Shown piece by piece: positions 11,985-31,310 of a stretch of 64,000 nucleotides of DNA. Position 1 is the first letter of the stretch; every line of letters starts with the position of its first letter. The position numbers and the translations under genes are program-made. The notes under the pieces were generated by a model that did not search any database, was not told where the DNA came from, and was given only the letters and a program-made list of their open reading frames with translations. The DNA is from Oculina patagonica (lineage: Eukaryota). The stretch spans positions 28,396,001-28,460,000 of the forward strand of contig NC_135766.1 in the NCBI RefSeq assembly GCF_052425735.1. The letters are read 5' to 3'.

Positions 11985-14900
11985 ATGAATCCTGCATCTT
12001 CTTCACTGTCAGCTCTGCTGATTTTGGTCGTCTTTGGAAATCTCTCTTTCGCAGTGAAAGGTAAGGCGTTGATTATTTTCGTCATTGTGAAGAGTTATTT
12101 TGCATTTTCCATGTGTTTCTTCATTGAAAATTGAGATGCGTTTATGTTGACTGTATCTCAACAAAATTTGATCAAGATCTTGAAATTTTGCAGTTTGCCG
12201 ATTTTCCTGCTTTTGAAATCGATTTGCTATCATTTCAAATTGTTTCCTTTTGTCCTTTCAGTTTTTCCTTTCGCGATTTATCACCAGGGCCTTTTTTTTA
12301 CAAGGAAATTGACGAAAAACGTGTAATGGCAGAGATCTCGCTTTCGTAATGCGCAACTTTGAATTCGGCATAGACTGGCAGAGTCCTTTCCAAGGAATGA
12401 GTTTCTTTCTAATTCTGCGGGTTACTGAGTTCATCTTTTCGGAGTTAAATTCGCTTCTACCGTTATCATTGAGACAACGATTTATTTTTAATTCAGATAC
12501 ACTCATGAAAACTCCATCACACGCCCCCTCCGTGAGTAGATTCTTTGCACTCGACATCTTATAAGATAACAGAAATCAATGACAATCGTTAGCTGTTGGG
12601 ATTGAACTTAAAGGCTGTTTGCATGTATCAATCTTTCTATTCTTTGTGCTTCATGCTATATATGGTTCCCATTCATGCATTAAGGTCTCCGTCATTATAT
12701 AGCTCGGTACACTCGTACGAATTTCGGCTCTACAATCTCCTTAGCGTAAACCAAGCAGAAAATTGTGTACATTATTGCCGCATTTCAGAGAATGTCCTAC
12801 GTTGCAAAATTTGTTTCAGTAGCTCAGTCTTGTATGAAAATGCAAACACGCCCCCGTTAAGGATCACATAATCGGAAAAATACACATAAAAGCGTTAAAA
12901 TGCTTGGTAATGCTTTACTTTCGGGATTCAAAGCTGCAGTTGCTGTTTGTCGTTTGCTTTGCAATCTCCCTGGGATACAAAAATTCATTTTGGTCCATTT
13001 CTTTCAAAAGTTGTTACTTGACAATTAAGCTCACTCTGGAGTGCGCGGATTCGACACAGATTTCCGGGTCCGGTTTAAATAACATTTCAAAAGAAAAACT
13101 TAAGCGAAGATTTTTAAGTGCCGTTCAGCTTTTCTATTAAAATCCTGTTACCCGTTCCTTACGCAAAATTCTTTGTAGTTCCTACCTCAAAGACATAAAG
13201 AAACTGACTAAACGCGAGAATATTCTTAACCAAAGGCATATTTCCACTGTCAGGATTCAAGGGGGGTACTGTGTATCTTTCTCTCTCTTCTTCATCCTTT
13301 GCATATCTGGTTTCCCGCACTCTCCAATTCAGTTAATTATTTGGCTCTTCAGTGTATTTGCATTAGACTGTCTGCTTTGATAATCCGTTGGCTAAAACCC
13401 TGCTAGATCACCTTTTCCTCGTGCGCGTCAAAAAGCGTCGATTTATAACTGAACCGTAATGGTCCATAATGAACCAATACCCAATTGTGTCGAACAGATG
13501 TATACTCAATAGGCCTTCAGCATTTGTGGGGATTTTGATGCACAATATTTGAAATCTTGACCCATAAAGAAGTTATATTTAGCATGTCTGTCACATCCGA
13601 CAGATGATGCGGAAACTAGAAAAAAACAACAAGGCAGCATTTGGTCGCGGAGAGCCGTTATCTACGTCACACGACACAAATCCGATACAAATCTACCCAG
13701 GTGTCTGAAAAGACTGGAATAATAAATGTCTTCACGCCAGATTCGCACAAAATACCCCTCTTAGAAAATAAGATACATTGAGACGGAAATATTTCTAACT
13801 GAAGTTTGCATCTGCGTGACTATGAAGCAATAGCAAAATATAGACTTCACGTTCATGCCACTGACACGTTTGTCATTCGATTTTTCCGTTGGCTCAATAA
13901 GTGTTCATATAAGATATAATCCTCTCTTTTCGTGATAAATGCTATTTATGTATAGAAACATGCTTATACAGAGTTGACCTTTGGCTCTGGCTATCATTTG
14001 TTCTGATTGTTATCCTCTTGAAAGACCTGAAATAGCCATTTCTAACATATGGGGCTAAGATTACATTTACATACAGACACACAGTCACGGTCACAAATAA
14101 ATTAAATTAAATTTCAATTAAATTTGTATGCGCAACTATATGCATCGATTTATATTTTCGGTGGTACGATTTACATCTGTAAATTATTACTTTATTTATT
14201 ATATTCATGATGATAGGTACCTGCACTGCACTGTATTTACGTGGGACTTCAAAAGGAAACAAAAAAAAAAAAAAATAGATGGGTTAAGTGCACAACAAGT
14301 CCAACCATAAAGTGATACTAACTCCACAGAAATCCGAAAATTTTCTCTAGTTCATGAGTGTTTTTATCCGATTTTTGAAGAGCAGATAATGATTTACAAT
14401 GCCAATTTTTTTTTTTTTTACGGAACATCCTTCAAACATTTAACAGTATTTTCTCTGGAAGCAGTAAACATTGAAAAAAATGGCCATTGTAACAGCAAAC
14501 ACTAAAAATTATGGACAAATAGTACTTAACACTTAACCTCATTCAGACCCTCTTGAAGATTTGGTGTAGGAATTGAATTTGCATTATCTAAAAATTTATC
14601 CGGCATGCCTTTTATTTCGCAAGTGATGTCGGTATTTAATGTGCGCGCAAGTTTCTGTTGATTGACGTAATTGATGAGGAAACTTATTTGATAGGTCATG
14701 AAAACACAGGACCACACGCCCCTTATCAGGGGGGGAAATCACGTTCAACTTTTATTTTCAGTAATGCTGGTCAATCTTATGCTGCAGTCTAAGTTCACTC
14801 TTCGTTTCATTTTGCAGTGCTTGTGTGGTGCTAGTATAATGCTTATACTTCAGCTACAGCAGAAACATATTCAAATATTTCATTTCACCTGAAATGTATT

Positions 14901-17900
14901 CCTTATCTATTGCACATTAATTGTCGACACGTGTAACCGCCTCTTTTGACGTCGATAGATCAGAGAAAATAAGACCTCTTACGCAAAATTGCTTCCACCA
15001 ATTTGGATATTTACACCAGAAATTTACGATTTCGTGATCAAACCACGCTTTAGACCGTTTATAGTTTCCTGTTATAAAAAAGGACAAAGATTGTTAGGAC
15101 AAGAAGAGACCGTGAGAGGGAAAGAGGGGGGGAGGGGGGGGGGGGGGGGGGGTGTGTGTGTGTGTGTGTGTGTTTTTCAACGCTCTCGTGAGTCCTTATC
15201 AACCTAGTAAAATGGCCCAGCTCACAACGAGTCTCTCGTAGCTCAGTTCAGGTTAGAGCGCCCAACCGGTATCTGGGAGGCCATGGGTTCGATTCCCGTC
15301 GGGGACTTAGAATATTTCTTTATCCCCTGCTCGTGTCATGTTGAATACTTCATCTTCATCTTCCATTTACTCTTATTATTTACTATTGAGAATTTGGATA
15401 CTGCAGGCATTTCTATCAGGAACGATGACATCAGTCACTTTTATGACCTTGACTACTTGAATTTGTTGATATAATCCGTTCAGTGATTCTAGCGGCCTCG
15501 GTGGAAAACCCGCAGTCCACAATCTCGCAGTCGACTTGATTCGCAATTTTAATCAGTTTAAGTCATAACTTGAATATGTGTGATATCACAGTGATATCGT
15601 CCTAACACGCGACTTTGAAAGACACCGTATTCTGCAGAACTCTCGATATAGACGGACCATGTGTCCAACAGTCACGATTTAAATCGTAGAAAAAAAGGTC
15701 ATAAGATGAAATCGTCACGTTAATCGAAACGAAATGACGTGACTCAAGTTTGCCTGCGCTGCAATCTAAGATCACTATTTGTTTATTTTATGGGGGCTAG
15801 TCACGTCTCGCCCTGATTTTCAAAATGGCAGTTTACTGCCAATTTTAGCGCACGTTTTTATCCATGAAAGTCTTTTATTCAGAATCAAGGATACCAAAGG
15901 AAGTGAAAACTCTCATGCAGATCACTATTGAAGCGATTTTAAAAAAACAACAAACGTCTTGCATTTACTATAATCATTTGCCATGGATAGCTTGGCATAC
16001 TGCATGCATGTTTTCGACATAAACAATGGGATCAGTCACTTTTATGACCTTGACTACTTTATATAATCCGTTCAGTGATTCTAGCGATCTAGATGGAAAA
16101 CCCGCAGTTCACAATAACAAGAACACTTGACTTACTGCAAGAATCGGCTGAACCACAACTTAAATAAAGCGACGTTTCTGTGATGTTGTCCTCTCGAAAA
16201 CGAGCTAATCGAGGCAAAAATTTGCTGAGGACTGGCCTTGTGTTTATCAGTATATGCTTTGTAGGCCTTTTTTTTGACTGTTTATTTATCGGAGATTTTT
16301 ACAAATGAAATGTACTTGTCGTCACGCCACATTTCGAATCATTTTCAAAATGGCGGTTTTACCGCCAATTTTACAACGTTTTTGTTTGTGTAAGTTTTTT
16401 TTCAGAATCAAGATCACCAGAAGCAGATAAAATTCTCACTAGTTAACAGATTTAAATTAAAACATCTTTCATTTACTCTTATTATTATTCATTACTGAGA
16501 ATTTAGTTACTGCAGGCATGTCTATCAGAAACGATGACATCAGTCACTTCCATGACCTTGACTACTTGAATTTGTTGATATAATCCGTTCAGTGATTCTA
16601 GCGGACTCGGTGGAAAACCCGCGGTCCACAATAACAATAACACTTGACTCATCGTAAGAGTCGACTTGATTCGTAATTTTAATCGGCTTAAACCATAACT
16701 TGAATACGTGTGATATCACAGTGATATCGTCCTAACACGCGACTCTGAAAGACCCCGTAGTCTGCAGAACTCTCGATATAGATTTACCACGTGTCCAACA
16801 GTCACGATTTAAGTCGTAGAAAAAAGGTCATAAGTTAAAATCGTCACGTTAAACGAAACAAAATGACGTGACTCAAGTTTTTTTGTGCTGCAATCTAAGA
16901 TCATTCTTTGTTTATTTTATGGGGGCTAGTCACTCATCACTCGATTTAATTCGATTGCAATTGCAAAAAAAATGTACTTGTCGTCACGCCCATTTTAAAA
17001 ATGGCGGTTTACCGCCAATTTTAGCACGTTTTCACATGAAAGTCTTTCATTCATAATCAAGAATACCAAAGGCAGTGAAAACGCTCCCCATTGAAGCGAT
17101 TTAAAAAAAAAAACAAACATCTTACATTTACTATAATAATTTGCCATGGATAATTTGGCATACTGCATGCATGTTTTCATAAACAATGGGATCAGTCAAT
17201 TTTAGGACTTTGACTAAGCGATGTTTCTGTGATGTTGTCCTTTACGCACAAAAATCCTCAGAAAAGACTTCGTTATCCGCAGACTGCTCTCGCAAACGAA
17301 CTAATCGAGGCAGAAACTGCCGAGGAATGACCTTGTGTTTATCAGTATGCTTTGTAGCCTTTGCAAAAATAAATCATTAAAAGAACAACTCGCTATGAAA
17401 AAAAATGGAACCTAGAGCAAACTGCTAATGAAAGGCAATTTATAAAAAGCAAATAACACCGAGTAGTATACATACACGAAGAGCAGTTTTAGAAAACTAG
17501 TTTTTGAAAATAATTTGCCAACTATGATTTAAATGGAATCGAGAATAAATAGAAAAAAAAAAACATTTTCTGAATCAAGTGGCACTGCATGGTTTCAACT
17601 TGGCACTGTACATAGGCGGCAGAGGGGGAGGGCAAGTGCAGCATTAATTAACTTGGTTTTTAAGAAAACAAATCTCTACTCTGGCCACATTAGCTGCGTC
17701 ATCGGCGACTTCAGATCATACATCTTTTCCCTCGGATACGACATCTAAAGAACAATCCAAAAAGAACCACGAAGCAGGATCGTCTTAATATGCCGGGTTA
17801 TGCACAAATCGATTACGGACGCATTGACACTGTTAAAAGGCATTTTGGGAAATTTTAGTAGGGAATGCGCCTTCGGGGGAGATGAGAGGGGTATGCGCTT

Positions 17901-20900
17901 GACTTGAAGCGAAGTGGTTCTCCCCACTATGTCCCCCGCGACACCCTAGTGACACTTTTCCTACCACTAGGCAACCAGCCCCAACCCCTGCCCCATTCTC
18001 TCCAAAAGTTCTTTATGCAAAACATTAAGGGAACCCTGGATTTCTATTGTTTTTATACTTGAGTTTAATGAATGTCATGCGCTTTTTACATAAGCCTCTG
18101 GCTCGGCTGGATAGGAAGCTCGGAGCGTAATGTCATCCCCTGCCATGGCCCTTATAAATTGATTGATTAATTGATTGGACACAAACTTTGTGTTTTTTTG
18201 TTGCTTCTAAAAGGAATTCCATTGCAAACTGGACACTTAAACATATCTGAAACGCTACAAGAATGGGGTTGCAGCGGTAGCTGTCTTTCTTTACAACATT
18301 GTCGATTACCACGTTGTGGAAACGTTGTATTTCCATTTACATTTAGTGGATCAGGAACGGTACGTATATATATCGTAATGAATATAAATGGAGGGTCTGA
18401 ATGTGGGTACCACGATAAAACTAAACAGTTAATATTTGGCCCTGTAACATGAAACAGTTAGATTTTTGGCATTTAACTTTAACAGTTAAAAAATCACTAT
18501 AACAGTAAATTTTATCCAGAAAGAAACAAAAACGGCTTCAAAAAGGTCAATATCATTTTGTTTAGTATACCAAGAAGTTTTCGGACATTTTCCGACGACT
18601 TCCATTTTCGATCATATTGGAAGATTTTTTAAGATACTGAAAATTCCCGAATGCGACCGAAGATGTTCGAAGACTACCGAAAATTCTCAAAGAGAAAATC
18701 AATGATGTCCGAAGACTACCGCAAATTCCAAAGAGAAAACCAACCAACAGACTGGTTGGTGAATTTTGCGTGGCCTCCCTGGTGAAAATTTTAGCTCTCA
18801 GGTCATTGTATTTTGTTTAAAAAAATGTAAGGGTTTTATTTCTCCCAAAGACTGGTGCTTTGTTTATGTACTCAAACGACTGCGTCTGGATTAACTGCAC
18901 GATCTTCAGTTTTTCTAGGTCAGGGAAATGAAACACATTATTAGATGTTTGCTTGCCCTTGTAAAGCTTTCATCTAATTTGTGTGAAACATCCAGCGGTT
19001 TCCTTCAGCTCCTCCACTCCCAAATACAGTAACAAAATCAACAAAAATGGGTAAAAACTCTAAGTTGTCAAATGAGAGAACTGAAGAGATAGAGAACTCT
19101 GACATTTTTGTATCTTACTCGGATTGTTAGGTCCAAGTTCATGTAACATTGAGCCATGGTGAGCAGTTTTCACGTGTTCACTCGCCTGCTGCTGTGTGGG
19201 TTGAATCAGTCAGTACACGTGGATTTAAGGTGTGTGCACGTGAGTCAGGCATCGGAACAAATGGAACTGGAGTCCTTAACTGGCTGGCTTTCCAAGATCA
19301 ACCAAAATTGACACATGGAAGCGTTAGTTTTAATGGCATTTGGACAACAGAAACTAAATGCGAGAAAGTCACATTCTCTCAGGTAAGATGGTATGATTTG
19401 TTATAGATGTTTATCTCGAAAATGTCTTTTAATTGTCACACTTTTATTTCTATGAACATATTGCAGAGCTTTGGTGGAAGACCTTCTGTGTTTGTGTCAG
19501 CTAAGTACACACGTGACACAAAGCCTGATGACGCAATGTACGTCTGGCTGGAGAATGTAAAACCAGGAAGTTTCGAAGTGTGCCTCCGAGAGTTCTTGGT
19601 GTTTGACGGCAAACATCAAGACACTATTGTGGTGGGTACACGACTTGTAAAATTTTCGATCACCCAAGTTAAAATATTTTAACCGTTTAAAAGATATTGG
19701 TTGAATGCTTATATACGGAATAATAGCTTCGAATAATTAACAACTATTCCATGAGCGCATGTTGGATATGATGTGGTAGTTAGCTATAACTATGTCATAT
19801 CCAACATGCGCTAGTGAAAAAATTGATTTATTAGAAACGCTAAAATAATGGTAGTATTTGAGCACCCCAGCTATTTCCGTTGACGCGTAGACTCCTACCA
19901 TATTTGCAGTTCATAGTATATGAGCTCATATTTCATGGCCTGTGAACCAATCAAGACACAGGAATTGCAATATACCACAGCGTACAGCTACGTTTATCAG
20001 GCACTACATGAATTAATATTCCTCACAACAGTTTCTCAATCTCGTCTTTCCTTGCGTACACTTAATATACAGTAAAACAAAGTCATTTTTCAATTGAATA
20101 ATGAACTTTGGCCTGCTTGAAGTATATACTTTTTAATTTCATCGTGAGTGATTCTTTCTTCCCAGGACTGGTTCGCATTCACCAGCAATGGGTCCGAGCT
20201 AAATTTTACGATGACAGGGGAAGTGTACTTCCCCAACAGCGGCAGTCCTACGGCGGACAATAATTATGGCTTCTGTCATGTAAGTGGCTTTGATAATCTT
20301 CAACAACATCATCCCAAAACTGAAATGGAGGCCTTTAGGTTATTACCCACTAAATTAAAAATACATTTTCCCAAATCACGTGGTTTCTCACTACATGAAA
20401 ATCGTGGAAATAAGCACTAGGTTTAGATTTGCAAAACACCCTTTTTTAGAAGCGCTTATATTCAGGAGGGCTTACATACAAGGCGCTTTATTGTGCAAGT
20501 TTACCTTTAAAAATGTTCTAGGTTTCAGTTTTTACGGGATACTACGACTGTCTATTATATAATTTATCTCTCTAAACATGTCGGATAAAATCCAAAAATG
20601 CCTCTCAGTCTTTTCAAACATTCTCTAACAACGTGAGAGGAGAACAAGTTAATAAAAAAGTAAGCTTATCTGCTTATATTCAGAAGGGCTTATTTCAGAA
20701 GTGATTTTTGAGGGATGGGATTTGGACGATTGGGGGAGGGCATGGGGAGGAGTAAGGGATGGTTTTTCGGGAAGTGGTTTTAAGAATTAACGGTAGTTCT
20801 TTTCCTATTTTTCATGCTCAGGAAGTTCAGTATAACACGACTTTTTATAAGTCCCCGGCTGTGCTAGTCTCTGTCAGTCATCAATATGACCGACAAGTGA

Positions 20901-23900
20901 AAAGTCATGTTCCGTCGGAGAATAACCTGATAACAGCTTGGGTTGAGGTAGGGTTAAATGACGATTGTTAGAAAAGAGTTATTGAGTCCAAATCAATTGA
21001 CTAAAAAAGGTTGACATTTTCTTTATAGGAAGTTCGTCTGACATCCATGAAAATTTGCGTTAAGGACTTATCTGGAACAGGAAGTCAACACGACCCCCTG
21101 ACAGTCAGTTATGTTGTGATTGGAGGTTGGTAATAAATTGAATTATGATATCTTTTATTTGAAAAGTTTTCCATGTCCAAAATTAAAGCAATTAAGAGAG
21201 ATTGAGTTTCCGTGCTATGGCGAAGGTGACTATTTTAATTTCCTTTCATTAATTTTAAAAGAAAGCTCAAAATGAATATCCCTTTATTTTCCATCTACAG
21301 ACTTGAATCCATGTTTGGGCGTAGTGTGTGAGTCGTTTGGTGTCTGTAAGACCTACAGTGCACATGAAGCTCGCTGCGTGTGTAACGAAGACTGCCCTTC
21401 CTATCAGGATCCAGTGTGTACCGCCAATGGTACAACATACGACAACAAATGTCTTTACGAGCTTAGCTTCTGTAAAGAACATGACAATAATACTGTTTAT
21501 CACCCAGGAAGCTGTGAGGGTAAGTGAGCAGTTATCATGATATAGCTTACGAGGTCTAGAGAAGGTCTAGAGAAGGTTAACGAAAGGGCCATTCGCTTTG
21601 TTTTCAAGGACAAGAACACCCCTTACAGGGACCTTCTACAAGCCCTTGGCCTGCGAACCTTGGCCGAGCAACGAGTATACAAAATTGCTAGCTCGATTTT
21701 CAAAACAATAAACGGTCCTAGCCCTCCCTGCTTGCGTGAGCTGATACAACCTAGAAGCTATTCCTACAACTTAAGAGGACAAAATATTCTCAATCTACCT
21801 AACGTGCAAACTACCAAGCACGGACTCAAATCTTGGCGATATTTCGCCCCCAAATTATAAACTTCAATATGCTGTAAAACCTTTAGAAAGGCGTTAAATG
21901 CTGTAGATATTAGTCGTCATTTGTAATTTTTAATTAATTAAATAATTGTATATATTCTATAACTTTTAGCTCATTTTTAATCAGGAAATGCGTCGCACAT
22001 ATTCAAAGCTTTAAAGCTTTGAAGAATTTTATTCACTTTATTTTATTTTATTTTATTTTTATTTATTTTTTATTTATTTATTTTTTTTTCATTGTGGCTT
22101 ACCTGTAAACTAGCTGGTGCGTTCCCGCAGATTTTGCTAACCATATCTGCGGGACGCATCGAAACCATAGCTAAGTGTAATGACCACATTGAACATTGTA
22201 TTATATTGTATTGTATTGATTTTACAGTTTTATTGATTTTGAGTACTTTGCAGTAATTTTGGGCGGTTTTCGGACGTTTTGGAAACATTTTTGAAATCCA
22301 AGATGGCGGAGCCAAGATGATGGCTGTTATGACATTATGATGTCATTGTCACGTGATGTGATGTCATCATCCCTCGTGACGTATACCAAAAGATAGATTT
22401 TTGTACATACTATGTATCCTCCACGTTTCGTTGTGATTGCTTAAATATTCTGGAAGTTACGGAGGGGTGGGTTTTCACGTGAGTGTCAATTCCATTAACA
22501 GTCTTGTCGGTAATCAAATTTTCTTATCTTCTTATTTATGACTTTAGTAGGACCAAGGTATAAATGCAATACAATTCAGATGCTAAAATGGTGTAGTGGC
22601 CCAATGTGATAAGGTTTGTAGCTTAATAAAAACTTTTCCATTCAATAACAGGCTTTCCAATTGCGCATGGCCGTGTAAAGCTTCTTCGAGTTCCCAAATG
22701 GTCTGACTCAAGCTGCAAGACAGTGGTATTCCCACCATACCGGTTCTACCCGGATAAACAAGTTCACGTACAAATAACACTGAATCACATGAATTTGAAT
22801 GACTCGGTAACAGTTCACCACGCTATCACCTCGTGGACGGAAAATGTGAATACACGAAATTTTACAGTCTGCGCCATGCAATCTGGGAGGAATGGAAACA
22901 ACTTTAACCCATTTGCAACTGTGGAATGGATGGCGTATCAAGGAGCAACGCAAGAAGTAATGACGGGAATAATCAGCATTAAAAAATGGTGGTCTGGAAC
23001 AAATTGCGAAGATATGACGTTTCCAAAGGTTTGCTTGGAATACATCTGTATTAGAAATTCAACACACCTTACAGCTAACTGCATGCAACATGGCGCAATT
23101 TTCTTATCAGCAGTCATCTTATGATTAATTTCTCTGTTTTTCATTGCAGGACAAGTTTAAGGAGGCGCCTGTAGTTCTGGTGACGTCAGAGCATCTTAGG
23201 ACTGGTAAAGAGTATGATGCCTCGCTGATCTGGACAGAGGATGTAACCAAGGACTCATTTAAAGTCTGTCTCCGGGAACTACAAAACTTTGATGGAAAAC
23301 ATGAAGATATTAATGTGGTATGTGATCAAGTGATTTATTTTTCGAAATGTTTTGGAATGAACGAAATGAACAAAAATCCTCTCCTTAAAAATTAATGAAA
23401 CACTTGCTTTGATCTGACGTGTTAGGCTTATTGTATTCCAGTTGAGTAGTCCTTTTGGTAGTCTGGGTACCGTACGGTGACATAAATTATATTCGGTCAC
23501 GAAAGGATGAACGTTGTGAAGCTAATTGCTCTTTGTATTTATCGCTAATTCATTGATCAGTTTAGCTACAGTTGAAGGTTACAAGGTAATAAAAACATAA
23601 AGCCCTTTTCATTTGAGTGTCGTAAAACCAAAGTAATTACTCTATAGCTAGCAAATCACAAAGGGCAGGATAATCCATTGAACCAATGAAGCAAATGCAT
23701 GTAGCCAGCACAAAGCTCGGGAAAAATGTATTAGGAAGTCCCGATTGGGTTTGGTTTTCTTCTGATTGGTTGAAAAAGTGGCGCGAGATTTTAAAACCAA
23801 TCAGAAAGCGTAGCAATGCTAAACCAAAACAACAAGTGATCACTACTCTATCATTGCCATTTCCACATTTTACTTGCAGAACTGGATGGCGTTTACGAAA

Positions 23901-26900
23901 CTACACAAGCCACTCTTCACTGAACATGGCTCTGTGAAGTTTACAAACACAAACCCACCAACAGATGATAACAACAACGCTTACTGTGAGGTAAAGTTAC
24001 AAAATTAATGTACTTTGGGTAACAAAATACTTCTAGATACAGAAACATTAATTTATATTTTAATTGTCCCCGCCTTAATTAACGATCATTTTGTGAGCGA
24101 TTTGAAACGAGGATAACGGTTCAGACGACTGATTATAATTGCATGCAGGAAACATTTCCATTCTTAAGCTCCTCTGGATTTTTTTCTGTCATTACCTCTT
24201 TCCCCGAAGCCTCAAAACAATCATTTTTTTGTTGTTGAATAGACTATTGTATCTTACCTATTAAGGAGGAAGTCTGAGGGTTAAATAGGATAGGGAGGGT
24301 ATTGCGGCGTTTGGGCAAAAGAGAGGTGAGGTGTTTGGGGGGCGGGGGGGGGGGGGGGGTTAAACAGTAGAGTGTTTATGGCATTTCGTTGTTATCTACA
24401 GTTTGTGCCGTTTACACGAAGTTATAACATTACACCATCAGTCCTGATATCAGCCAATCACAGCACAACGGCCAGCGGAAACTCGGCACCAGTTCACAAC
24501 GGTATTACTACGTGGATCGAGGTAAGTTGTCACATTGAAGAAAATCACTTTAATATCTCTTACTGAGAGACATAATATAACTTTTCTGTTATAAACCTGG
24601 CTTAGGGAAACGGCCATTTGATATCGACAATATAAATTATCAACAGAATAACATTGTCTTGATGAAAAGTCATGTTTCAATGAAATATATAGAAAAAAGC
24701 GATCAGGTCTAAGAGAGTTACAATGTAAGAACTGCTATTCCAAACTATCCAATAAGGTTGTAGATTTTGGAAACTACGCTTTGCAGGCTAAGAACTAATT
24801 TATTGTTGTTATTTTCGTAACTGCAGAAATCATGGTTTTGTTAATATTGTATGGCATTTGATTTGCAGAACATGAACGCTTCTGGATTTAGAGCCTGTGT
24901 TAAAGAGTTGTACGAGACCAGATATGACCCTGTGTCAGTGAATTATGCGGTCCTTACAGGTAAGTAAACACTGCATAACACGTGGTGATTTCGAATATAA
25001 TTGTTTGAAGACTGAAATCAAGAGAAATTACCATGTAAGGGTAGAAAATTCATTCTATCAGACGCACATTATGGAGATCTGTGGACTATTGGCTGTTATA
25101 ACCGATATTTACACAAAATAGCAAAACCGTAACAATGGACATATTACTAATAGTATGTTGCACACTTTACCGTTTCGAACTGTTTTAAGGAAATGACACA
25201 AATGAAACAGTTAAGCCTTTTAGATTTTTTAGCGCTGTTTGTTAATATACTAATAGCCCAAAAGTGGAAATATGAACTTTCGAAATACAACGAAAGAATT
25301 TAAGCAGACCTTAGAGTAGTCTCATTCAGAAGAAACTGAGTGCTAAAATACATTTGTTACTTGCGCAGATATTTGTGAACCTGGATGGAGTTATTTTAAC
25401 GGCTTCTGCTATTTCACGAGCGAAACCTGCACAAACTGGACCAATGCGCTATCAAAATGTCGGCAAGCAAACTCCGTTCTTGTTGATGTGAACAGCAATG
25501 AGGAAAATGTTTACATCCAACACAGACATAATGGCGAGAAATCGTGGCTGGGATTGAACGACAGATCAACAGAAGGTGACTTTACTTGGGCGGATGTTGG
25601 ACGGGCGAACTTTACAGCTTGGGCCAGAAACCAGCCTAATAATTTCAGAGGAGAAGATTGTCTGCACGCCCTTGGTTTGAAGTTGAACTACGAGTGGAAT
25701 GACGTGAAGTGTAGCGACTGTCATCAGTATACTTGTAAGAAAGGTAAGCTTTAAGTTTTTGTATCCCGTTGTTTACACAGATACGATAGAAATTAGGCCG
25801 AGCTGACATATATCCAAAATTCAACATTTAACGTCGAGAATCTTTAAAAATTGTCACTCAAATGCAGCTAATAGGAATTAAGATAATCCGCGTAACTAAC
25901 CGATGAAAACTGATAATCGATTAGCAACTCGATGAATCAATATTAATCGATAGTATTTGTAAATGCAGAATATTGAAACTTTTCGATAACCGACGATTAA
26001 ACAATAGTTACGCTTAGCTATTCTTCAATTACCTCCAAATGTTATTGACTGATATCGATGAACATCGATCGGTCGACATCGATTTCATTCACCATCGACA
26101 AAATGTCTAGCAATATTTAGTGATAACCACCTAGTTGGATATTTTCTTGCTGCTTCACCAAATTAATTTTCAGAAGAAAAAAAAGCTTAAAAAATATACA
26201 GACTTGTTGGTTGGTTACAGACTTGTTGGAGCTCGGATACTGGCAGGAAATAAAAATAATAATAAGGGCACTGACTAGTTCACCAAACCAAATCAACTGA
26301 ACCATGCAAGCCAAACCAAACCTAACCTAACCTAACGAAATCAAAATCAACCAAACCAGATAAAGAAAGGTTTAACTGAAAGTAATATAATTTACTCGAT
26401 TTTTAAACAGTTATCAATTAAGGGAGTAAAAATTATATCCCTAGACTAACTTATTATAAAATATAATTACCGCAACGACGTATGGAATCAAGTTATAAGG
26501 TTGTTCCGCAAAAAGTGTCATATAATGTACTGTCAATAATGTTGTACAAGTAGATAAACTGATGACTTCAGTGATATTTTACCTATCTATCCACCAGACT
26601 TAAATGAATGCCAGAGAGAGAAGAATTACTGTCACAAGCTGGCCACTTGCGCTAATGAGCGCGGTTCATACACGTGCACTTGTAACAATGGATACGTTGG
26701 AGATGGCTTTGATTGTTACCATAGTTACGCGGGTAAGATTTATTAATTAATAGTGAAAGCAGTTGATGAACAGTCCAAAGCCTTTTTGTTAAAGACATTT
26801 TCATTACAGCGCCTTGTTTTGACCCTTAAATTAGAATTCAGTTAAACTGAACAAAATCTTAATCTTATTGTTCTAGTGGAATTCTAACTACATTTTCTTC

Positions 26901-29097
26901 AAAAACAATTTTTTAAACAAGCCTTCTCGGGAATTGAGTTATTTATTAATATTTCTTAATTTCCGGCTTTGAAACTTCAGAGAAACGAAGCCATTTTGAT
27001 GACAGCTACGACGAGAAGCCACTGTACACAAATTGGTCACAGTGTTTAATAGCCCAGCCAATCAGATGGCAGCATTTGCATAAGCACAGTAAAAATATTC
27101 TACTAATTGTGAATCAGACGAGAGTGTTACTTTGGCCACTCTTTTGCTAGAAAAATCTTTGTTACGTTTAAACATAAGCGTGAAAGGGTGGCGACATTCG
27201 TAACGTAACGATAACAACATGTAATGGTGAGATAATGCATGTGCAAATTTACATATCAAGGCAGTGCACTGAACATTTAATTTTATCCTGACAAGCTTTA
27301 ATTTTATTGAAATTGTATGTTTGCTCCCATTTAGGTTTGGGATACTCAGCAATCCTAGCAAATGACGATAATTACTTGAGTACCCTAAGCAACTGGTTAA
27401 AACCTGTAACCCAAAGTAAATCTTCGTACTGGAATCGTTGCTACCGAGCAACCGTAAATGGTTGGTCTTCTGGAACGTTCCACTCAAACTGTGACGACCT
27501 GGGTCCTACTGTCACAATCGTTCGTGTAGGAAGGTACATATTTGGAGGATATACGAGTCTCTCATGGAGTAAGTAATATGAAATACTTTATCTCTTTTAA
27601 TTTTCAATTTAAGGAGCCACATATGTCAAATGTGCTCTATGTACGTGGAAATCGCTGTGTCTAAGGACTGGAAAGCCATATCAACCATAACTGATTTTCA
27701 CGGGGTTCTCTTTACCCTTGGAGAAAGGCTAGAAAACTCAGTTGAGAAAAATTCCTCCCACATGTCCCGGCTCTCGAACGGAAGTGAACTATCCAAATGA
27801 CCCATCTTAGTCTGCTCATCAGCTGTCAATTCAGTGACCCTTCCTTGCTATTTAAAAAAAAAACAACACTAATTACGGGGATCAAGACCCGCTTTATAGG
27901 TGATTGCGAAGGAAGGGGCCCCATGCAAAAGGTTTCGGCCCACCCCTAGATCCACCTCTAAAATGAAACTCACTTATATAGCAGTTATTAAAAGTTGTTC
28001 CTAAGCCGTACAACTGTAATCCTATTTTGTCCAAGCCTGTGAATACGGCCACTTCTTAAAGCGGCTGTATAAGCAGGATAATTATTTTGTTTTTGAAAGT
28101 TATTCGCTTTTGTGAATTAACTATACGCGTTGTGTCAAACAAGTGAAATTTATCGTATCTGCGCCAGTAGCTGGTTGGAGTTCAGCGGCACTCCTCTGTA
28201 CTCGAGTCAGCGGTGTTTATTGTTGTATAAAAGATTGCGGTTGTTCCTAGGCGACCGCCATCTTTGTTGTATCTAGTTCTTGTTACGAGGAGATTTCGCT
28301 TGTATTAAAGTTTACGCTTACGGATCATCGGGTCCTAGTGTGTTTATTCAAACTACTGGCGCTGAAAAAAATCAGACAATTTATTTACTAGGAGTGCAAT
28401 TGTATTCTTTGTCGACTGTCTTTAGAAAATTTACTCTGCACACGGAAACCAGGGTAGATGAGTTTCTGTATCTGACAGGTATGCTAATTCAAGGGGTCTG
28501 AAAGAGGTAAACCGCACCCCAAACAAACTTGCAATTATCTCTGGTTCTGTTATTCGAACGGTTAACATTACTATATGTCCTTGAGACAAAATTTCAGGGG
28601 AGCACGACACCGTACGATGTTCAGGAATTATGACGAAATGTGTTTCACCAATCTAATTAACCTTATAAAATTCGTTCGATTTGAAGCGGTCCAAAGTGTT
28701 ATTAAGCATCATATAAATGTATAACATATGTTCCACTGTGTTTTTCTATTTAGGCTACAATTGTATCGGATATCGGTACGATTCAGCAGCATTCCTGTTC
28801 TCACTTGTTAACAAGCCTGGTTGGCAACCACTAAAAATATACCAAACAGGACAGTATAGTTATCAAAAAAGTTACTCTATCTACACTTGCTTTTCATATG
28901 GACCAATATTTGGAGGAGGAAATGATTTCTTAATTGCAGACTACGCGTCGTCAAGCACAAATTCCCACTCAAACCTTGGTTACACATATGGCCCGCCATC
29001 TGGTTACAGCTATAAGTCCTCCTTCGCTGGTTCATTCCTGGCGGGTAGTTACAACTTTCAGCCTGACGAAGTGGAAGTCTTTTATGAAACTACGTGA
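11985..29097 (+). CDS. Gene B: secreted mosaic protein (6 H-type-lectin-like repeats, follistatin/Kazal, C-type lectin, Ca-binding EGF, TLDc), 1049 aa
   Basis: 17 exons, all GT-AG and phase-compatible, 3150 nt with no internal stop: 11985-12060, 18214-18359, 19131-19382, 19467-19631, 20166-20279, 20822-20947, 21029-21125, 21301-21519, 22652-23028, 23150-23317, 23880-23990, 24402-24521, 24869-24959, 25369-25743, 26598-26732, 27335-27568, 28754-29097. Exon 1 encodes signal peptide MNPASSSLSALLILVVFGNLSFAVK; its link across the 6.1-kb intron is the least certain. AATAAA at ~29141. Confidence 0.85.
15200..15360 (+). mobile_element. Fragment of a tRNA-containing interspersed retro-repeat
   Basis: GTAGCTCAG..GGTTAGAGCG..GGGTTCGATTCCCGTCGGGGA with flanks matching the inverted copy at 37135-37270. 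Confidence 0.65.
15361..17362. repeat. ~1.1-kb direct tandem duplication in intron 1 of gene B
   Basis: 15361-16270 aligns with 16467-17362. Sub-repeat ATCAGTCAC(T)TTTATGACCTTGACTA occurs at ~15430, 16031, 16539 and 17191. Confidence 0.85.
18214..21125 (+). CDS. Gene B exons 2-7: first triplet of H-type-lectin-like repeats
   Basis: Three ~95-105 aa repeats with pattern G.V...C..V.F...F...P.V.V...W(V/L)E.V...F.VC.RE...(N/D)W.AF. Confidence 0.7.
21301..21519 (+). CDS. Gene B exon 8: follistatin/Kazal domain
   Basis: PCLGVVCESFGVC...ARCVCNEDCPSYQDPVCTANGTTYDNKCLYELSFC...HPGSC is the 10-Cys follistatin pattern. Phase 1-1 exon. Confidence 0.9.
21555..22220 (+). mobile_element. 5'-truncated CR1/L2-type LINE 3' fragment in intron 8 of gene B
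   Basis: LEKVNERAIRFVFKDKNTPYRDLL...YNLRGQNILNLPNVQTTKHGLKSWRYFAPKL resembles a CR1/L2 ORF2 C-terminus. Followed by a 3' UTR with stem-loop and (ATTGT)n tail. Confidence 0.75.
22652..24959 (+). CDS. Gene B exons 9-13: second triplet of H-type-lectin-like repeats
   Basis: Repeats align with the first triplet (e.g. SFEVCLREFLVFDGKHQD vs SFKVCLRELQNFDGKHED) and share intron positions. Confidence 0.7.
23608..23840. repeat. Abundant short interspersed repeat (CCAATC-rich family)
   Basis: GAGTGTCGTAAAACCAAAGTAATTACT...TTCTGATTGG..GAAAAAGTGGCGCGAGATTTT. Related copies at ~45960-46170 (reverse) and 60088-60660. Confidence 0.7.
25369..25743 (+). CDS. Gene B exon 14: C-type lectin domain
   Basis: CEPGWSYFNGFCY...W..A..KC...ENVYI...WLGLND...W...QPNN...EDC...WNDVKC...YTCKK. 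Phase 1-1 exon. Confidence 0.92.
26598..26732 (+). CDS. Gene B exon 15: calcium-binding EGF domain
   Basis: DLNECQREKNYCHKLATCANERGSYTCTCNNGYVGDGFDC. Phase 1-1 exon not shown in the ORF track. Confidence 0.9.
27335..29097 (+). CDS. Gene B exons 16-17: C-terminal TLDc domain
   Basis: WNRCYRATVNGWS..FHSNCDDLGPTVTIV..IFGGYT / AFLFSL..GPIFGGGNDFLI..FLAGSYNFQPDEVEVFY. Intron at the same position as in gene A. Confidence 0.9.
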
Positions 29098-31310
29098 AGG
29101 AATCGCGGAGTTCGGAGTCTTAGCTTTACAGGCCATGCACAATAAAAATAAACTTTAAAAATTGGGATATCAGAAAACTTCATTTTGTTCTCATTATGTC
29201 AGTTCACATATTAGTATCATTTACACACGATATGCAAAAAAGAATCGAATTATTAATTACAATAATTATAGTAATTAGATCTAAAAGCTTCTGAAGGATG
29301 ATTGCAGCAAAGCAATTACCAGGAATTAAATTGAAATTATTGATTTTGTCGGGATGGCAGCGTTCTCGAACATAATGTTTATTTAGGTTAACAACAGAAA
29401 CCGGCTCGGATAACTTTATGGTGTCAGCCTGACTTAGTATTCAAACTGAGAAAAATCGGGAACAGATCTATCCAGTAATAAAACGACAAGAAATGATACC
29501 TTAAACTTGGAATGGGTGGCATATGGTTTAAAGGGGCGTAACTGGATTTTCTTTTTAACTTAGAATTCTTTCTCGAAAAGTGTATGCCCTGAGTACAAAG
29601 AGCGGCAATAAAAATACTAAAAAGAAAACACATTTTACACTAAACCAACTTTTTTTTAAAAATAAACATAACTTTTGACTGCCCGTTTGAAAGGGAGAGA
29701 TCTCATTACGAAGTTTTAAATTGAATTTAATTTGATTCTAATTTATCATGCCAAGAATGTAATGTGTAGGTTTCAAGCTGATTTTGCTGGTTTAGATTTT
29801 TAAGAAAAAATAGGCCGGTCAGATTATGATAGTTCTTGTGTAGTTGGGTACTGATCAGCATTTGTCATTAAATTGTGCTGTCTCACAAAATAATTACTTG
29901 CAGTTGTGTGACACAACGTTGTAAAAGTGTGAAATAATTAAATAGAGCAGGGTGAAAATAACGTGTTTCTTGTGCTTGTTTTTATCCCGTTCTTATCTCT
30001 GCTATGTCCCTGATTTAGAGTTACTGCACGGTATAACAGGGTTGCCACAGGCCAGAAAATGGCCAGGAAAAAAAATTATTGAAGGTTAGGGGAAGTCAGG
30101 AAATTTCAACATTTCGAATTAAGTAAAGGCCGAAAAAATTACAATTTTAACAACTTTGATTTTATCCCATTGTAGGCTGTAGGCTTGTGACCACTGCTAT
30201 AACTGTCCGTTTGCTTTTATTTAGTCAGGGAAAATCATTTGCTTTTTCTGTGAAAAGTCAGGGAATTTTGAAAACTGATGTCTTTGGTAGCCATGTATAA
30301 ATGAGAACGATGCGATGCAAGGGAACGTCCAAAATAAAAGCCAACTAAAGTGCACTTTCAAGTTGCGTCATCTGTGACAAAGCGCCGGTCACGCAATGGC
30401 ACGCAAGATAACAGTTAGCAAACTGCAACCAGTCTTAAGCCGGAACGCATACAATAATGTTGACATGTCTTTGTGACTGCCATGTTTTATAGTAAATGCT
30501 TTTAATCGTGGTTAATTTTAAACCCATTTACCTTATAGCGTATCACACCAAAACGCCTCAAAAAACCACACCCTTTGGCGACACTAATACTTGTAGAGAG
30601 TATAAACGGGAGTACTTCTTCAACCCCTGCCTCCCCCGACTTATGATAACTGACTACTGAAGCAGAATGAGTTCAATATCTATATCGGCTATCTCAATAT
30701 CTTGCAATATCTACAAAGCACATGTGGCGTTCGGTGCTCGAGCTTCAGCACGAGTACTGCCTGTGAGATACGTATTCACTAGAGTCTATGTAAATAGCGC
30801 CTTATATAAGTGAGGAACCATGTAATTTTGAGGGGAGAGGGGTGGGAAATTTTCTCAATAATTTTTGTTTTTCAGCATTGGTATTTGCAAGATTTTTTTT
30901 ACGAACATAACTCTATGCAAGATTTTTTTTGTACCATCCATGTTTATCAGGTGGGGCCTCGAATTTTTTTTCCGTGCTCGCCGGTGCACGATTTTTTTCT
31001 CCTACTTTTCATATAAAATCAGTTTTTTTCGTAATTGCCCCCTTGAACAATTAAATTGTCTGTTCCCAAGTCGACATTAGTCACGTTAGCCTCAGGCAGA
31101 AAAAAAAAATCCTTGTCACAACCGAAATAATTAAAAAAATTTCGGTCACGTTTTCCCAATTCCTCGGTTCATGTTTTGCTGAAGCGAAGATATTAAACAA
31201 CATTATTACTGCTACTACTCAGTTTCTTCGCGGTCATTTTTCTTCCTTTCTTTTTTCAAGGATATGCGAGAAAGACTAGTGCTCTCAGTCTAGTACATTT
31301 GCCTTTTTGG
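28547..31310 (+). repeat. Segmental duplication, copy 2 (last TLDc exon + 3' flank)
   Basis: Colinear with 7770-10440, with an extra ~200-bp segment near 30640-30830. Confidence 0.9.

What the first reader, a model, noticed from the sequence alone, without database searches (positions are those of the whole stretch)
11985..29097. Secreted multi-lectin protein ending in a TLDc domain
Seen: a clean 17-exon, 1049-aa model with signal peptide, two kinds of putative glycan-binding domain, Kazal, cbEGF and a terminal TLDc, with no TM segment. Established: characterised animal TLDc proteins (OXR1, NCOA7, TBC1D24, MEAK7, TLDC2) are intracellular, bind V-ATPase and are tied to oxidative-stress protection. 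Inference: TLDc has been recruited as an extracellular module. It may be a recognition domain, or a protective domain delivered to glycosylated surfaces such as microbes, symbionts or mucus by the lectin modules. I know of no characterised protein with this architecture, but cannot search to confirm that.
Basis: partly seen in the sequence, partly recalled or inferred. Interest (0 to 1): 0.88.

Follow-up and report, generated by a model that had tools for sequence, protein, structure and literature searches.

The report
LePin-family coral lectin with TLDc head
This coral gene encodes a secreted multi-lectin protein of the LePin family, which soft corals use to catch their symbiotic algae, and it ends in a TLDc domain, a module so far studied only inside cells, here used as one of many interchangeable outer "heads" in a very large gene family.

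Summary
I rebuilt the same 17-exon, 1049-aa model from splice sites alone. It has a signal peptide, two triplets of H-type-lectin repeats separated by a Kazal domain, a C-type lectin, a cbEGF and a C-terminal TLDc, with no membrane segment. Likely-RNA contigs confirm six of the seven junctions in the 6 kb that was laid. Full-length collinear proteins are predicted in at least seven stony-coral genera and in a sea anemone.

The interpretation needs correcting in two ways.
- The scaffold has a characterised relative. It matches LePin, the secreted Xenia lectin that binds Symbiodiniaceae and starts their uptake.
- The gene is not a one-off. This genome holds about 40 close and at least 90 total copies of the scaffold exon, in tandem arrays, and at least 150 TLDc exons.

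In relatives, the position after the EGF carries TLDc, fibrinogen-like, COLFI-like, pentraxin, olfactomedin, PHR, D8C or CUB+SRCR domains. TLDc is therefore an exchangeable extracellular head. It keeps the canonical TLDc fold and is under purifying selection. No paper in the searchable library links TLDc to secretion or to LePin.

Another follow-up in this scan found LePin-like genes elsewhere in this genome. What the TLDc head binds is unknown.

The parts
11985..12060 (+). Exon 1: start codon and signal peptide (aa 1-25), ends in phase 1
   Evidence: It is the first ATG of the open frame. It holds the only hydrophobic segment of the protein. The donor is cagtgaaag|GTAAGG. It is 92% identical to the N-terminus of P0208.
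18214..18359 (+). Exon 2: N-terminal Cys-containing linker and start of H-lectin repeat A1
   Evidence: The splice sites keep the frame. It is 98% identical to P0208.
19131..19382 (+). Exon 3: H-lectin-like repeat A1 and start of A2
   Evidence: It is a paralogue of exon 9 within the gene.
19467..19631 (+). Exon 4: H-lectin repeat A2
   Evidence: The equivalent repeat in homologues scores H_lectin 85-87 bits.
20166..20279 (+). Exon 5: end of A2 and start of A3
20822..20947 (+). Exon 6: H-lectin-like repeat A3
21029..21125 (+). Exon 7: end of repeat A3, ends in phase 1
21301..21519 (+). Exon 8: Kazal domain (phase 1-1 exon)
   Evidence: Pfam Kazal_2, 34.3 bits, E 2.6e-8. Phases.
22652..23028 (+). 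Exon 9: linker, H-lectin-like repeat B1 and start of B2
   Evidence: At least 90 related exons occur in the genome, about 40 of them at 71% identity or more.
23150..23317 (+). Exon 10: H-lectin repeat B2
   Evidence: Pfam H_lectin is 19.2 bits on this exon alone and 61.6 bits on P0208. In the AF2 model of the P0208 triplet, the corresponding repeat matches SLL-2 at Z 6.6.
23880..23990 (+). Exon 11: end of B2 and start of B3
   Evidence: RNA-contig joints and loose ends in runs X16 and X18.
24402..24521 (+). Exon 12: H-lectin-like repeat B3
   Evidence: The joints 23990|24402 and 24521|24869 appear in X16 and X18. In the AF2 model of the P0208 triplet, the corresponding repeat matches HPA 2CCV at Z 10.1.
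24869..24959 (+). Exon 13: end of repeat B3, ends in phase 1
25369..25743 (+). Exon 14: C-type lectin domain (phase 1-1), with QPN and WND motifs
   Evidence: Pfam Lectin_C, 62.2 bits. Motifs at aa 776 and 797.
26598..26732 (+). Exon 15: calcium-binding EGF (DLNEC; phase 1-1)
   Evidence: Pfam EGF_CA 39 bits and EGF_3 43 bits. It is joined to exon 16 in X16 contig 18.
27335..27568 (+). Exon 16: N-terminal half of the TLDc domain (phase 1-1, no Met)
   Evidence: Pfam TLD 43.5 bits, profile positions 10-76. No Met occurs in aa 858-1049.
28754..29097 (+). Exon 17: C-terminal half of the TLDc domain and stop codon
   Evidence: Pfam TLD 27.6 bits, profile positions 83-167. The search found 1593 relatives. 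It is joined to exon 16 in an X18 contig from a diverged copy. Stylophora has the same exon structure.

Best explanation
The gene encodes a secreted, soluble pattern-recognition lectin of the LePin family. It is one copy in large tandem arrays.

Shown:
- The signal peptide, and two H-type-lectin triplets, each predicted as a compact three-sandwich unit.
- A Kazal domain, a C-type lectin with an intact QPN/WND calcium-sugar site, and a cbEGF. Together these form a conserved scaffold.
- A genuine TLDc fold attached after the EGF through phase-1 exons.
- The same position in relatives carries other extracellular binding heads.

Inferred:
- As with Xenia LePin, the lectin scaffold binds surface glycans of Symbiodiniaceae or microbes at the mouth and gastrodermis.
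- The C-terminal head adds a second binding specificity, either for another ligand on the particle or for a host surface receptor that triggers uptake.
- On this reading TLDc acts as an extracellular protein- or ligand-binding head, not as a regulator of the cytosolic V-ATPase.
- The array keeps a stock of old, diverged TLDc heads on a scaffold that is kept nearly uniform.
For: - Gene model and domains.
- Full-length collinear homologues with H_lectin + Lectin_C + EGF_CA + TLD in Oculina, Pocillopora, Porites, Stylophora, Montipora, Acropora and Actinia.
- LePin is described as a secreted protein with a signal peptide, H_lectin, Kazal, CLECT and EGF. It binds algae and is needed for uptake, and LePin-like proteins occur in symbiotic anthozoans (PMC7332420; bioRxiv 10.1101/2022.12.13.520278). 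Multiple LePin paralogues are expressed in alga-engulfing cells of Stylophora.
- Alternative heads on the same scaffold are Fibrinogen_C, COLFI, CUB+SRCR, F5/8-C, PHR, D8C_UMOD, Pentaxin and OLF. On C4, scaffold exons about 80% identical to this gene's are followed by a COLFI-like head instead of TLDc.
- TLDc also ends collagen-Ig-Sushi, TSP1, EGF and coiled-coil secreted proteins of anthozoans.
- The AF2 model of the TLDc of P0208 (74% identical) has pLDDT 94.9. The top 16 PDB matches are all TLDc domains.
- The TLDc exon has dN/dS of 0.17-0.34, so it is constrained.
- The H-lectin triplet model has pTM 0.87 and matches HPA at Z 10.1, discoidin I at Z 9.1 and SLL-2 at Z 6.6.
Against: - There is no binding, localisation or expression data for this gene or for any TLDc-bearing paralogue.
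- Signal-peptide calling is heuristic; no SignalP was available.
- I could not obtain the Xenia LePin sequence. Homology to LePin therefore rests on the published domain criteria and on papers that call stony-coral proteins of this architecture LePin paralogues.
- All characterised TLDc domains bind V-ATPase V1 in the cytosol. No extracellular ligand for any TLDc is known.
- One near-identical RNA contig reads through the exon-16 donor into intron 16. Some transcripts may therefore lack a complete TLDc.
Confidence: 0.6

Rival explanations
1. It is a matrix or mucus structural protein. The multi-domain protein would be a building block of mucus, mesoglea or skeletal organic matrix. TLDc and the lectins would serve to cross-link, not to recognise particles.
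For: Automatic names of relatives include 'fibrillin', 'aggrecan', 'hemicentin' and 'uromodulin'. cbEGF, D8C/uromodulin and COLFI heads are typical of matrix proteins. The protein carries 14 N-glycosylation sequons.
Against: The only tested family member, LePin, acts in alga binding and uptake. Copy-number expansion in tandem arrays with variable heads is more typical of recognition repertoires than of structural proteins.
Confidence: 0.15
2. The TLDc head keeps its canonical activity and modulates V-ATPase. After the lectin-coated alga is engulfed, it would influence acidification of the phagosome or symbiosome.
For: The fold is closest to the V-ATPase-bound TLDc domains of mEAK7, NCOA7 and Oxr1. 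LePin-type lectins travel with algae into phagosomes.
Against: The topology is wrong. A secreted protein ends up in the lumen, while the V1 sector that TLDc binds is cytosolic. Identity to V-ATPase-binding TLDc domains is only 15-21%. In relatives the head slot is filled by classical extracellular binding domains.
Confidence: 0.07
3. The TLDc is a protective antioxidant module delivered to glycosylated surfaces.
For: OXR1-family proteins are historically linked to resistance to oxidative stress (review PMC13570293).
Against: No catalytic mechanism is established for TLDc, and current structural work explains its effects through V-ATPase binding. Nothing in the sequence, the family context or the head-swapping pattern points to redox chemistry.
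Confidence: 0.05
4. This copy is not expressed as modelled. The TLDc exons would belong to another transcript, or this paralogue would be a transcribed pseudogene or a mostly intron-retaining copy.
For: The exact E16-E17 joint was seen only in a roughly 5%-diverged copy. A near-identical contig retains intron 16.
Against: - The frame is open through all 17 exons.
- E16 and E17 have no Met and start in phase 1.
- The E15-E16 joint appears in a near-identical contig.
- A paralogue model 89% identical is collinear over the full length.
- Stylophora has the same EGF-TLDc three-exon unit.
- There is purifying selection.
Confidence: 0.08

Closest known systems
LePin (Xenia sp.; Hu et al. 2020 Nature, PMC7332420; bioRxiv 10.1101/2022.12.13.520278)
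   Same: Both have an N-terminal signal peptide, no transmembrane segment, multiple H-type lectin domains, a Kazal domain, a C-type lectin and EGF domains. LePin-like proteins are reported in symbiotic anthozoans, with several paralogues in stony corals.
   Different: The published domain lists and text do not mention TLDc; 'TLD' has 0 occurrences in the papers read. Here a TLDc domain follows the EGF. I could not obtain the Xenia sequence, so direct homology and whether LePin itself has a TLDc tail are untested. LePin is treated as a single gene in Xenia. Here there are dozens of tandem copies.
Intracellular TLDc proteins (OXR1, NCOA7, TBC1D24/Skywalker, mEAK7, yeast Oxr1/Rtc5)
   Same: They share the Pfam family (TLD, 75-95 bits on homologues) and the fold (TM 0.66-0.71 by model length, 0.74-0.83 by target length to 4ACJ, 6R82, 7OBP and 8AR6).
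   Different: Those proteins are cytosolic and bind the V-ATPase V1 sector. This one sits behind a signal peptide at the end of a lectin chain and shares only 15-21% identity. It belongs to an anthozoan expansion of at least 150 exons in one genome.
H-type lectins: Helix pomatia agglutinin, discoidin I/II, octocoral SLL-2
   Same: The six-stranded beta-sandwich fold is shared (Z 10.1, 9.1 and 6.6). Those lectins work as non-covalent trimers. SLL-2 binds Symbiodinium.
   Different: Here three diverged repeats lie in one chain, twice over. They probably form single-chain pseudo-trimers (pTM 0.87; weak whole-model matches to the PCSK9 C-terminal domain and to single-chain C1q and TNF-family (APRIL-BAFF) trimers). 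Sugar-binding residues were not checked.
Ficolins, collectins, C1q-domain proteins and mollusc FREPs (by analogy, not homology)
   Same: They are secreted recognition proteins with a variable C-terminal globular head on a conserved stalk. In invertebrates they are expanded in tandem arrays.
   Different: The folds of stalk and head differ. Anthozoan collagen-Ig-Sushi-TLDc and coiled-coil-TLDc proteins resemble this layout more closely than the gene studied here does.

Membership tests
LePin-like lectins | N-terminal signal peptide and no transmembrane segment | tested here: met
   The only hydrophobic window is aa 4-25, and the C-terminus is not hydrophobic. This is a heuristic; SignalP and TMHMM were not available.
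LePin-like lectins | H_lectin, KAZAL, CLECT and EGF domains all present (the filter used in bioRxiv 10.1101/2022.12.13.520278) | tested here: met
   Kazal_2 34 bits, Lectin_C 62 bits and EGF_CA 39 bits on the window's exons. H_lectin is 19 bits on one exon but 47-86 bits on full-length homologues, and the fold matches HPA at Z 10.1.
LePin-like lectins | Sequence homology covering at least 60% of Xenia LePin | not testable with these tools
   No Xenia sequence was returned by any search. All three protein-search slots were used.
LePin-like lectins | Binds Symbiodiniaceae, is expressed in alga-hosting cells and is needed for uptake | not testable with these tools
   This needs experiments. The only expression evidence is that contigs exist in runs guessed to be RNA.
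TLDc domain family (PF07534) | Profile match above Pfam's gathering score | tested here: met
   43.5 and 27.6 bits on the two exons against a cut-off of 24.5. P0208, 89% identical overall, scores 80.8 bits.
TLDc domain family (PF07534) | TLDc fold | tested here: met
   AF2 model of P0208:850-1047 with pLDDT 94.9. The top 16 Foldseek PDB matches are all TLDc domains, E 1e-9 to 3e-3. The test was run on a paralogue 74% identical in this domain, not on the window's own spliced sequence.
Characterised animal TLDc proteins (OXR1/NCOA7/TBC1D24/mEAK7 type) | Cytosolic location | tested here: not met
   Location is predicted from sequence only: the TLDc lies behind a signal peptide in a chain of extracellular modules.
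Characterised animal TLDc proteins (OXR1/NCOA7/TBC1D24/mEAK7 type) | Binding to the V-ATPase V1 sector | not testable with these tools
   V-ATPase binding could not be tested here.
H-type lectins | GalNAc/Gal-binding residues at protomer interfaces | not tested
   Only fold and profile similarity were examined.
C-type lectins | Calcium/sugar site motifs (EPN/QPD-type triplet plus WND) | tested here: met
   QPN at aa 776-778 and WND at aa 797-799. QPN is a variant triplet and its specificity is unknown.

The most novel reading that the evidence does not exclude
In anthozoans TLDc is a major class of extracellular recognition head that has gone undescribed. It has hundreds of copies per genome. 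It is mounted on LePin-type lectin scaffolds and on collagen/Ig/Sushi, TSP1, EGF and coiled-coil stalks, and it is interchangeable with fibrinogen-like, pentraxin and olfactomedin heads. Its diversity would help decide which algae or microbes a coral accepts.
Probability: 0.35. Interest if true: 0.8.

Novelty: new variant of a known kind. Interest (0 to 1): 0.6.

Why it matters
LePin is one of the few coral proteins with a demonstrated role in recognising symbiotic algae. This work shows that stony corals carry dozens of LePin-type genes whose C-terminal heads differ, and that TLDc is one common head. That gives a concrete, testable source of recognition diversity for symbiont choice and immunity.

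For the TLDc field the finding is also new. A 2026 review mentions the domain 146 times without the words extracellular or secreted. A large, constrained, secreted TLDc family means the fold can do something other than bind V-ATPase. It also offers natural variants for finding out what.

Tried and rejected
- The spliced protein could not be handed to the search and folding tools. I worked through single exons and then through P0208, an 89%-identical full-length paralogue.
- The first literature searches (TLDc with secreted/lectin, coral, cnidaria, signal peptide, PF07534) found nothing relevant.
- One search with min_terms 2 was wasted.
- LePin + TLD returned only unrelated papers.
- Runs X10 and X12 held about 0.26-0.28 of the sampled words, close to the exon share. 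When laid they proved to be 90-95% similar genomic DNA, not RNA.
- Looking up P0001 returned no record.
- P0003 from Pocillopora is a separate TLDc gene beside collagen-Ig genes, not an orthologue.
- Foldseek on the H-lectin triplet gave only weak PCSK9 C-terminal-domain matches. VIA-align was needed to recover HPA.
- Positive selection on the TLDc head was tested and not found. dN/dS is 0.17-0.34 against this gene and no pair has dN above dS. The low protein identity of the heads reflects older divergence (dS 0.45-0.83 against 0.07-0.25 for the scaffold exon).
- The idea that TLDc exons are a separate gene was rejected. The reasons are under the rival explanations.
Full report
**Observation**

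The window has about 38% G+C and split genes. I listed GT donors and AG acceptors around the coding-looking open frames on the + strand and kept the combinations that preserve the frame.

- Every intron is GT..AG.
- The ATG at 11985 is the first in its open frame.
- The only hydrophobic window is aa 4-25, and the C-terminus (…EVEVFYETT) is not hydrophobic. The prediction is therefore a secreted, soluble protein.
- There are 14 N-glycosylation sequons after the signal peptide.

**Domains**

Single exons give these Pfam matches:

| Exon | Family | Bits |
|---|---|---|
| E8 | Kazal_2 | 34 |
| E14 | Lectin_C | 62 |
| E15 | EGF_CA / EGF_3 | 39-43 |
| E16 | TLD | 43.5 |
| E17 | TLD | 27.6 |
| E10 | H_lectin | 19 (sub-threshold) |

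The C-lectin has QPN and WND motifs, and the EGF starts with DLNEC. Two stretches of about 290-300 aa (aa 26-325 and 399-687) are internal duplicates, each made of three H-lectin-like repeats.

The Kazal, C-lectin, EGF and TLDc exons all begin and end in phase 1. This is the classic signature of shuffled extracellular modules. The TLDc exons contain no methionine, so they cannot be a separate gene with its own start.

**Transcript evidence**

Two searches for sequencing runs found coral runs. I laid four of them on 23101-29100.

- X10 and X12 behave as related genomic DNA.
- X16 and X18, guessed to be RNA, leave most intron bins empty and carry contigs with exact GT..AG skips.
- Junctions 23990|24402 and 24521|24869 (E11-E12-E13) appear in both runs.
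- Loose ends in X18 match E10|E11.
- A near-identical X16 contig joins 26596-26731 to 27334 onward (E15-E16).
- An X18 contig joins E15, E16 and E17, but it comes from a copy about 5% diverged.
- The X16 contig runs past the E16 donor into intron 16. Some transcripts are therefore unspliced or retain that intron.
E14-E15 appeared only as an imprecise skip in X10, which reads as genomic DNA.

**Relatives**

A full HMMER scan with exon 17 found 1593 relatives. The best were all anthozoan and uncharacterised.

One is a Stylophora fragment with EGF_CA + TLD. Its locus has the same three-exon structure as E15 to E17.

I used a long anthozoan TLDc protein as a carrier for a region-restricted search. 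This returned full-length proteins with H_lectin + Lectin_C + EGF_CA (+ Kazal) + TLD from Oculina, Porites, Pocillopora, Stylophora, Montipora and Acropora.

My model aligns end to end with these proteins:

| Protein | Source | Identity |
|---|---|---|
| P0208 | O. patagonica LOC144664642, 1047 aa | 89% |
| P0209 | O. patagonica | 81% |
| P0190 | O. patagonica | 77% |
| P0215 | Pocillopora | 78% |
| P0194 | Porites | 71% |

On such homologues H_lectin reaches 47-86 bits and TLD 75-95 bits. A sea anemone (Actinia) also has an H_lectin-Lectin_C-EGF-TLD protein in Pfam content.

The window's contig is 32,227,393 bp. The contig carrying these O. patagonica proteins has the same length, so that species is the probable source.

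**Link to known biology**

LePin was named in Xenia as a marker of alga-hosting cells (PMC7332420). It was then shown by RNAi and antibodies to be a secreted lectin that coats algae and is needed to form new alga-containing cells. LePin-like proteins occur in symbiotic anthozoans (bioRxiv 10.1101/2022.12.13.520278).

A Stylophora single-cell study reports multiple LePin paralogues in alga-engulfing cells.

By the published domain criteria this gene is LePin-like. None of these texts mentions TLDc. No relevant paper in the library holds both LePin and TLD. A 2026 TLDc review never uses 'extracellular', 'secreted' or 'signal peptide'.

**The TLDc head**

- An AF2 model of the head of P0208 (74% identical to this gene's head) has pLDDT 94.9.
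- Its 16 best PDB matches are all TLDc domains: mEAK7, OXR2 4ACJ (TM 0.70/0.81), Skywalker, NCOA7, Oxr1 and Rtc5.
- Profile search of PDB sequences agrees.

In relatives with the same scaffold, the segment after the EGF is instead Fibrinogen_C, COLFI-like, CUB+SRCR, F5/8 type C, PHR, D8C_UMOD, Pentaxin or Olfactomedin.

TLDc also terminates anthozoan collagen-Ig-Sushi, TSP1, EGF, Sushi and coiled-coil proteins. One of these lies in this same window at about 5.2-8.3 kb.

TLDc is thus one cassette in a slot otherwise used by recognised extracellular binding domains.

**Scale and evolution**

- The genome has at least 150 TLD-matching exons (260 candidates).
- It has at least 90 full-length exon-9-like exons, about 40 of them at 71% identity or more. 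They lie in arrays on C9, C4, C2, C1 and C5.
- In at least ten C9 copies, an exon-9-like exon is followed 6-22 kb downstream on the same strand by an exon-17-like exon.
- In the C4 array, the scaffold exon (about 80% identical) is followed by a COLFI-like head. That head is itself present in at least 150 copies.
- Scaffold and head have different histories. Exon 9 has neighbours at 94-98% identity, while exon 17 has none above 79%.
- Against P0208 the scaffold is 93-98% identical, the EGF 63% and the TLDc 74%.

Nei-Gojobori estimates against this gene, over ten paralogues:

| Exon | dS | dN/dS |
|---|---|---|
| Exon 9 (scaffold) | 0.07-0.25 | 0.06-0.26 |
| Exon 17 (TLDc) | 0.45-0.83 | 0.17-0.34 |

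The heads are therefore older and constrained, not hypermutating. Either the scaffold is being homogenised by gene conversion or the 3′ modules are being exchanged.

**H-lectin triplets**

An AF2 model of triplet B of P0208 shows 18 strands (three sets of six) with pTM 0.87. In that model, VIA-align matches repeat 3 to Helix pomatia agglutinin (Z 10.1, 90 of 99 residues) and discoidin I (Z 9.1). Repeat 2 matches the octocoral lectin SLL-2 (Z 6.6). There are weak whole-model matches to single-chain C1q and TNF-family (APRIL-BAFF) trimers and to the PCSK9 C-terminal domain. This is consistent with single-chain pseudo-trimers but does not prove them.

**Verdict**

It is best filed as a LePin-family secreted lectin with a TLDc head.

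The mechanism has an inferred part: glycan capture by the scaffold, and a second specificity or receptor coupling through the head. This rests on LePin's published function and on the company TLDc keeps in the head slot. What TLDc binds outside the cell is unknown.

A V-ATPase role is topologically unlikely. An antioxidant role has no support.

An independent follow-up in this scan also identified LePin-like genes elsewhere in this genome.

Noticed in passing
window 5178-8306 (+): A neighbouring gene carries TLDc exons at about 6219-6440 (TLD profile positions 9-82, E 2e-10) and 7977-8303 (71% identical to exon 17). The scan noted it as signal peptide + coiled coil + TLDc. P0012 from O. patagonica has a similar layout.
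   Followed up: partly
G000 C4:10.79-11.96 Mb, C4:20.34-20.43 Mb, C4:59.8-60.3 Mb, C14:23.1-24.1 Mb, C13:6.4-7.1 Mb: A roughly 192-aa single-exon head shows a weak Pfam COLFI match. It is the C-terminus of the LePin-like protein P0283. It has at least 150 copies (384 candidates) at 59-100% identity. Many lie 5-11 kb downstream of LePin-type scaffold exons on C4, and others stand apart from them.
   Followed up: partly
G000 C13:34.51-34.92 Mb and C14:19.69-20.12 Mb, 6.09-6.17 Mb: These are dense tandem arrays of TLDc N-terminal exons in long open frames (about 165-330 aa). They are the best TLD matches in the genome and appear unrelated to the LePin scaffold.
   Followed up: no
window 27569-27715: Contigs from likely-RNA runs continue past the exon-16 donor into intron 16. 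One is X16, near-identical, at depth 6. The other is X18, at depth 2.7. Reading through would end the frame two codons later and truncate the TLDc.
   Followed up: no
window about 23630-23800 (intron 10): Contig depth rises to about 6,000-196,000 in all four runs, with many loose ends. This indicates a very high-copy repeat inside the intron.
   Followed up: no
window 15280-17380 (intron 1): Near-duplicate ORF fragments lie about 1.1-1.2 kb apart on the - strand, for example 15376-15546 vs 16503-16652 and 15602-15775 vs 16809-16904. This suggests a tandemly repeated element in the 6-kb first intron.
   Followed up: no
window 21546-21857 (intron 8, + strand): A 104-aa open frame with no Pfam call looks like the tail of a retroelement ORF. 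This is a recollection only and was not tested.
   Followed up: no
window 44986-45485: A 500-base run of N (assembly gap or mask), which I left untouched.
   Followed up: no
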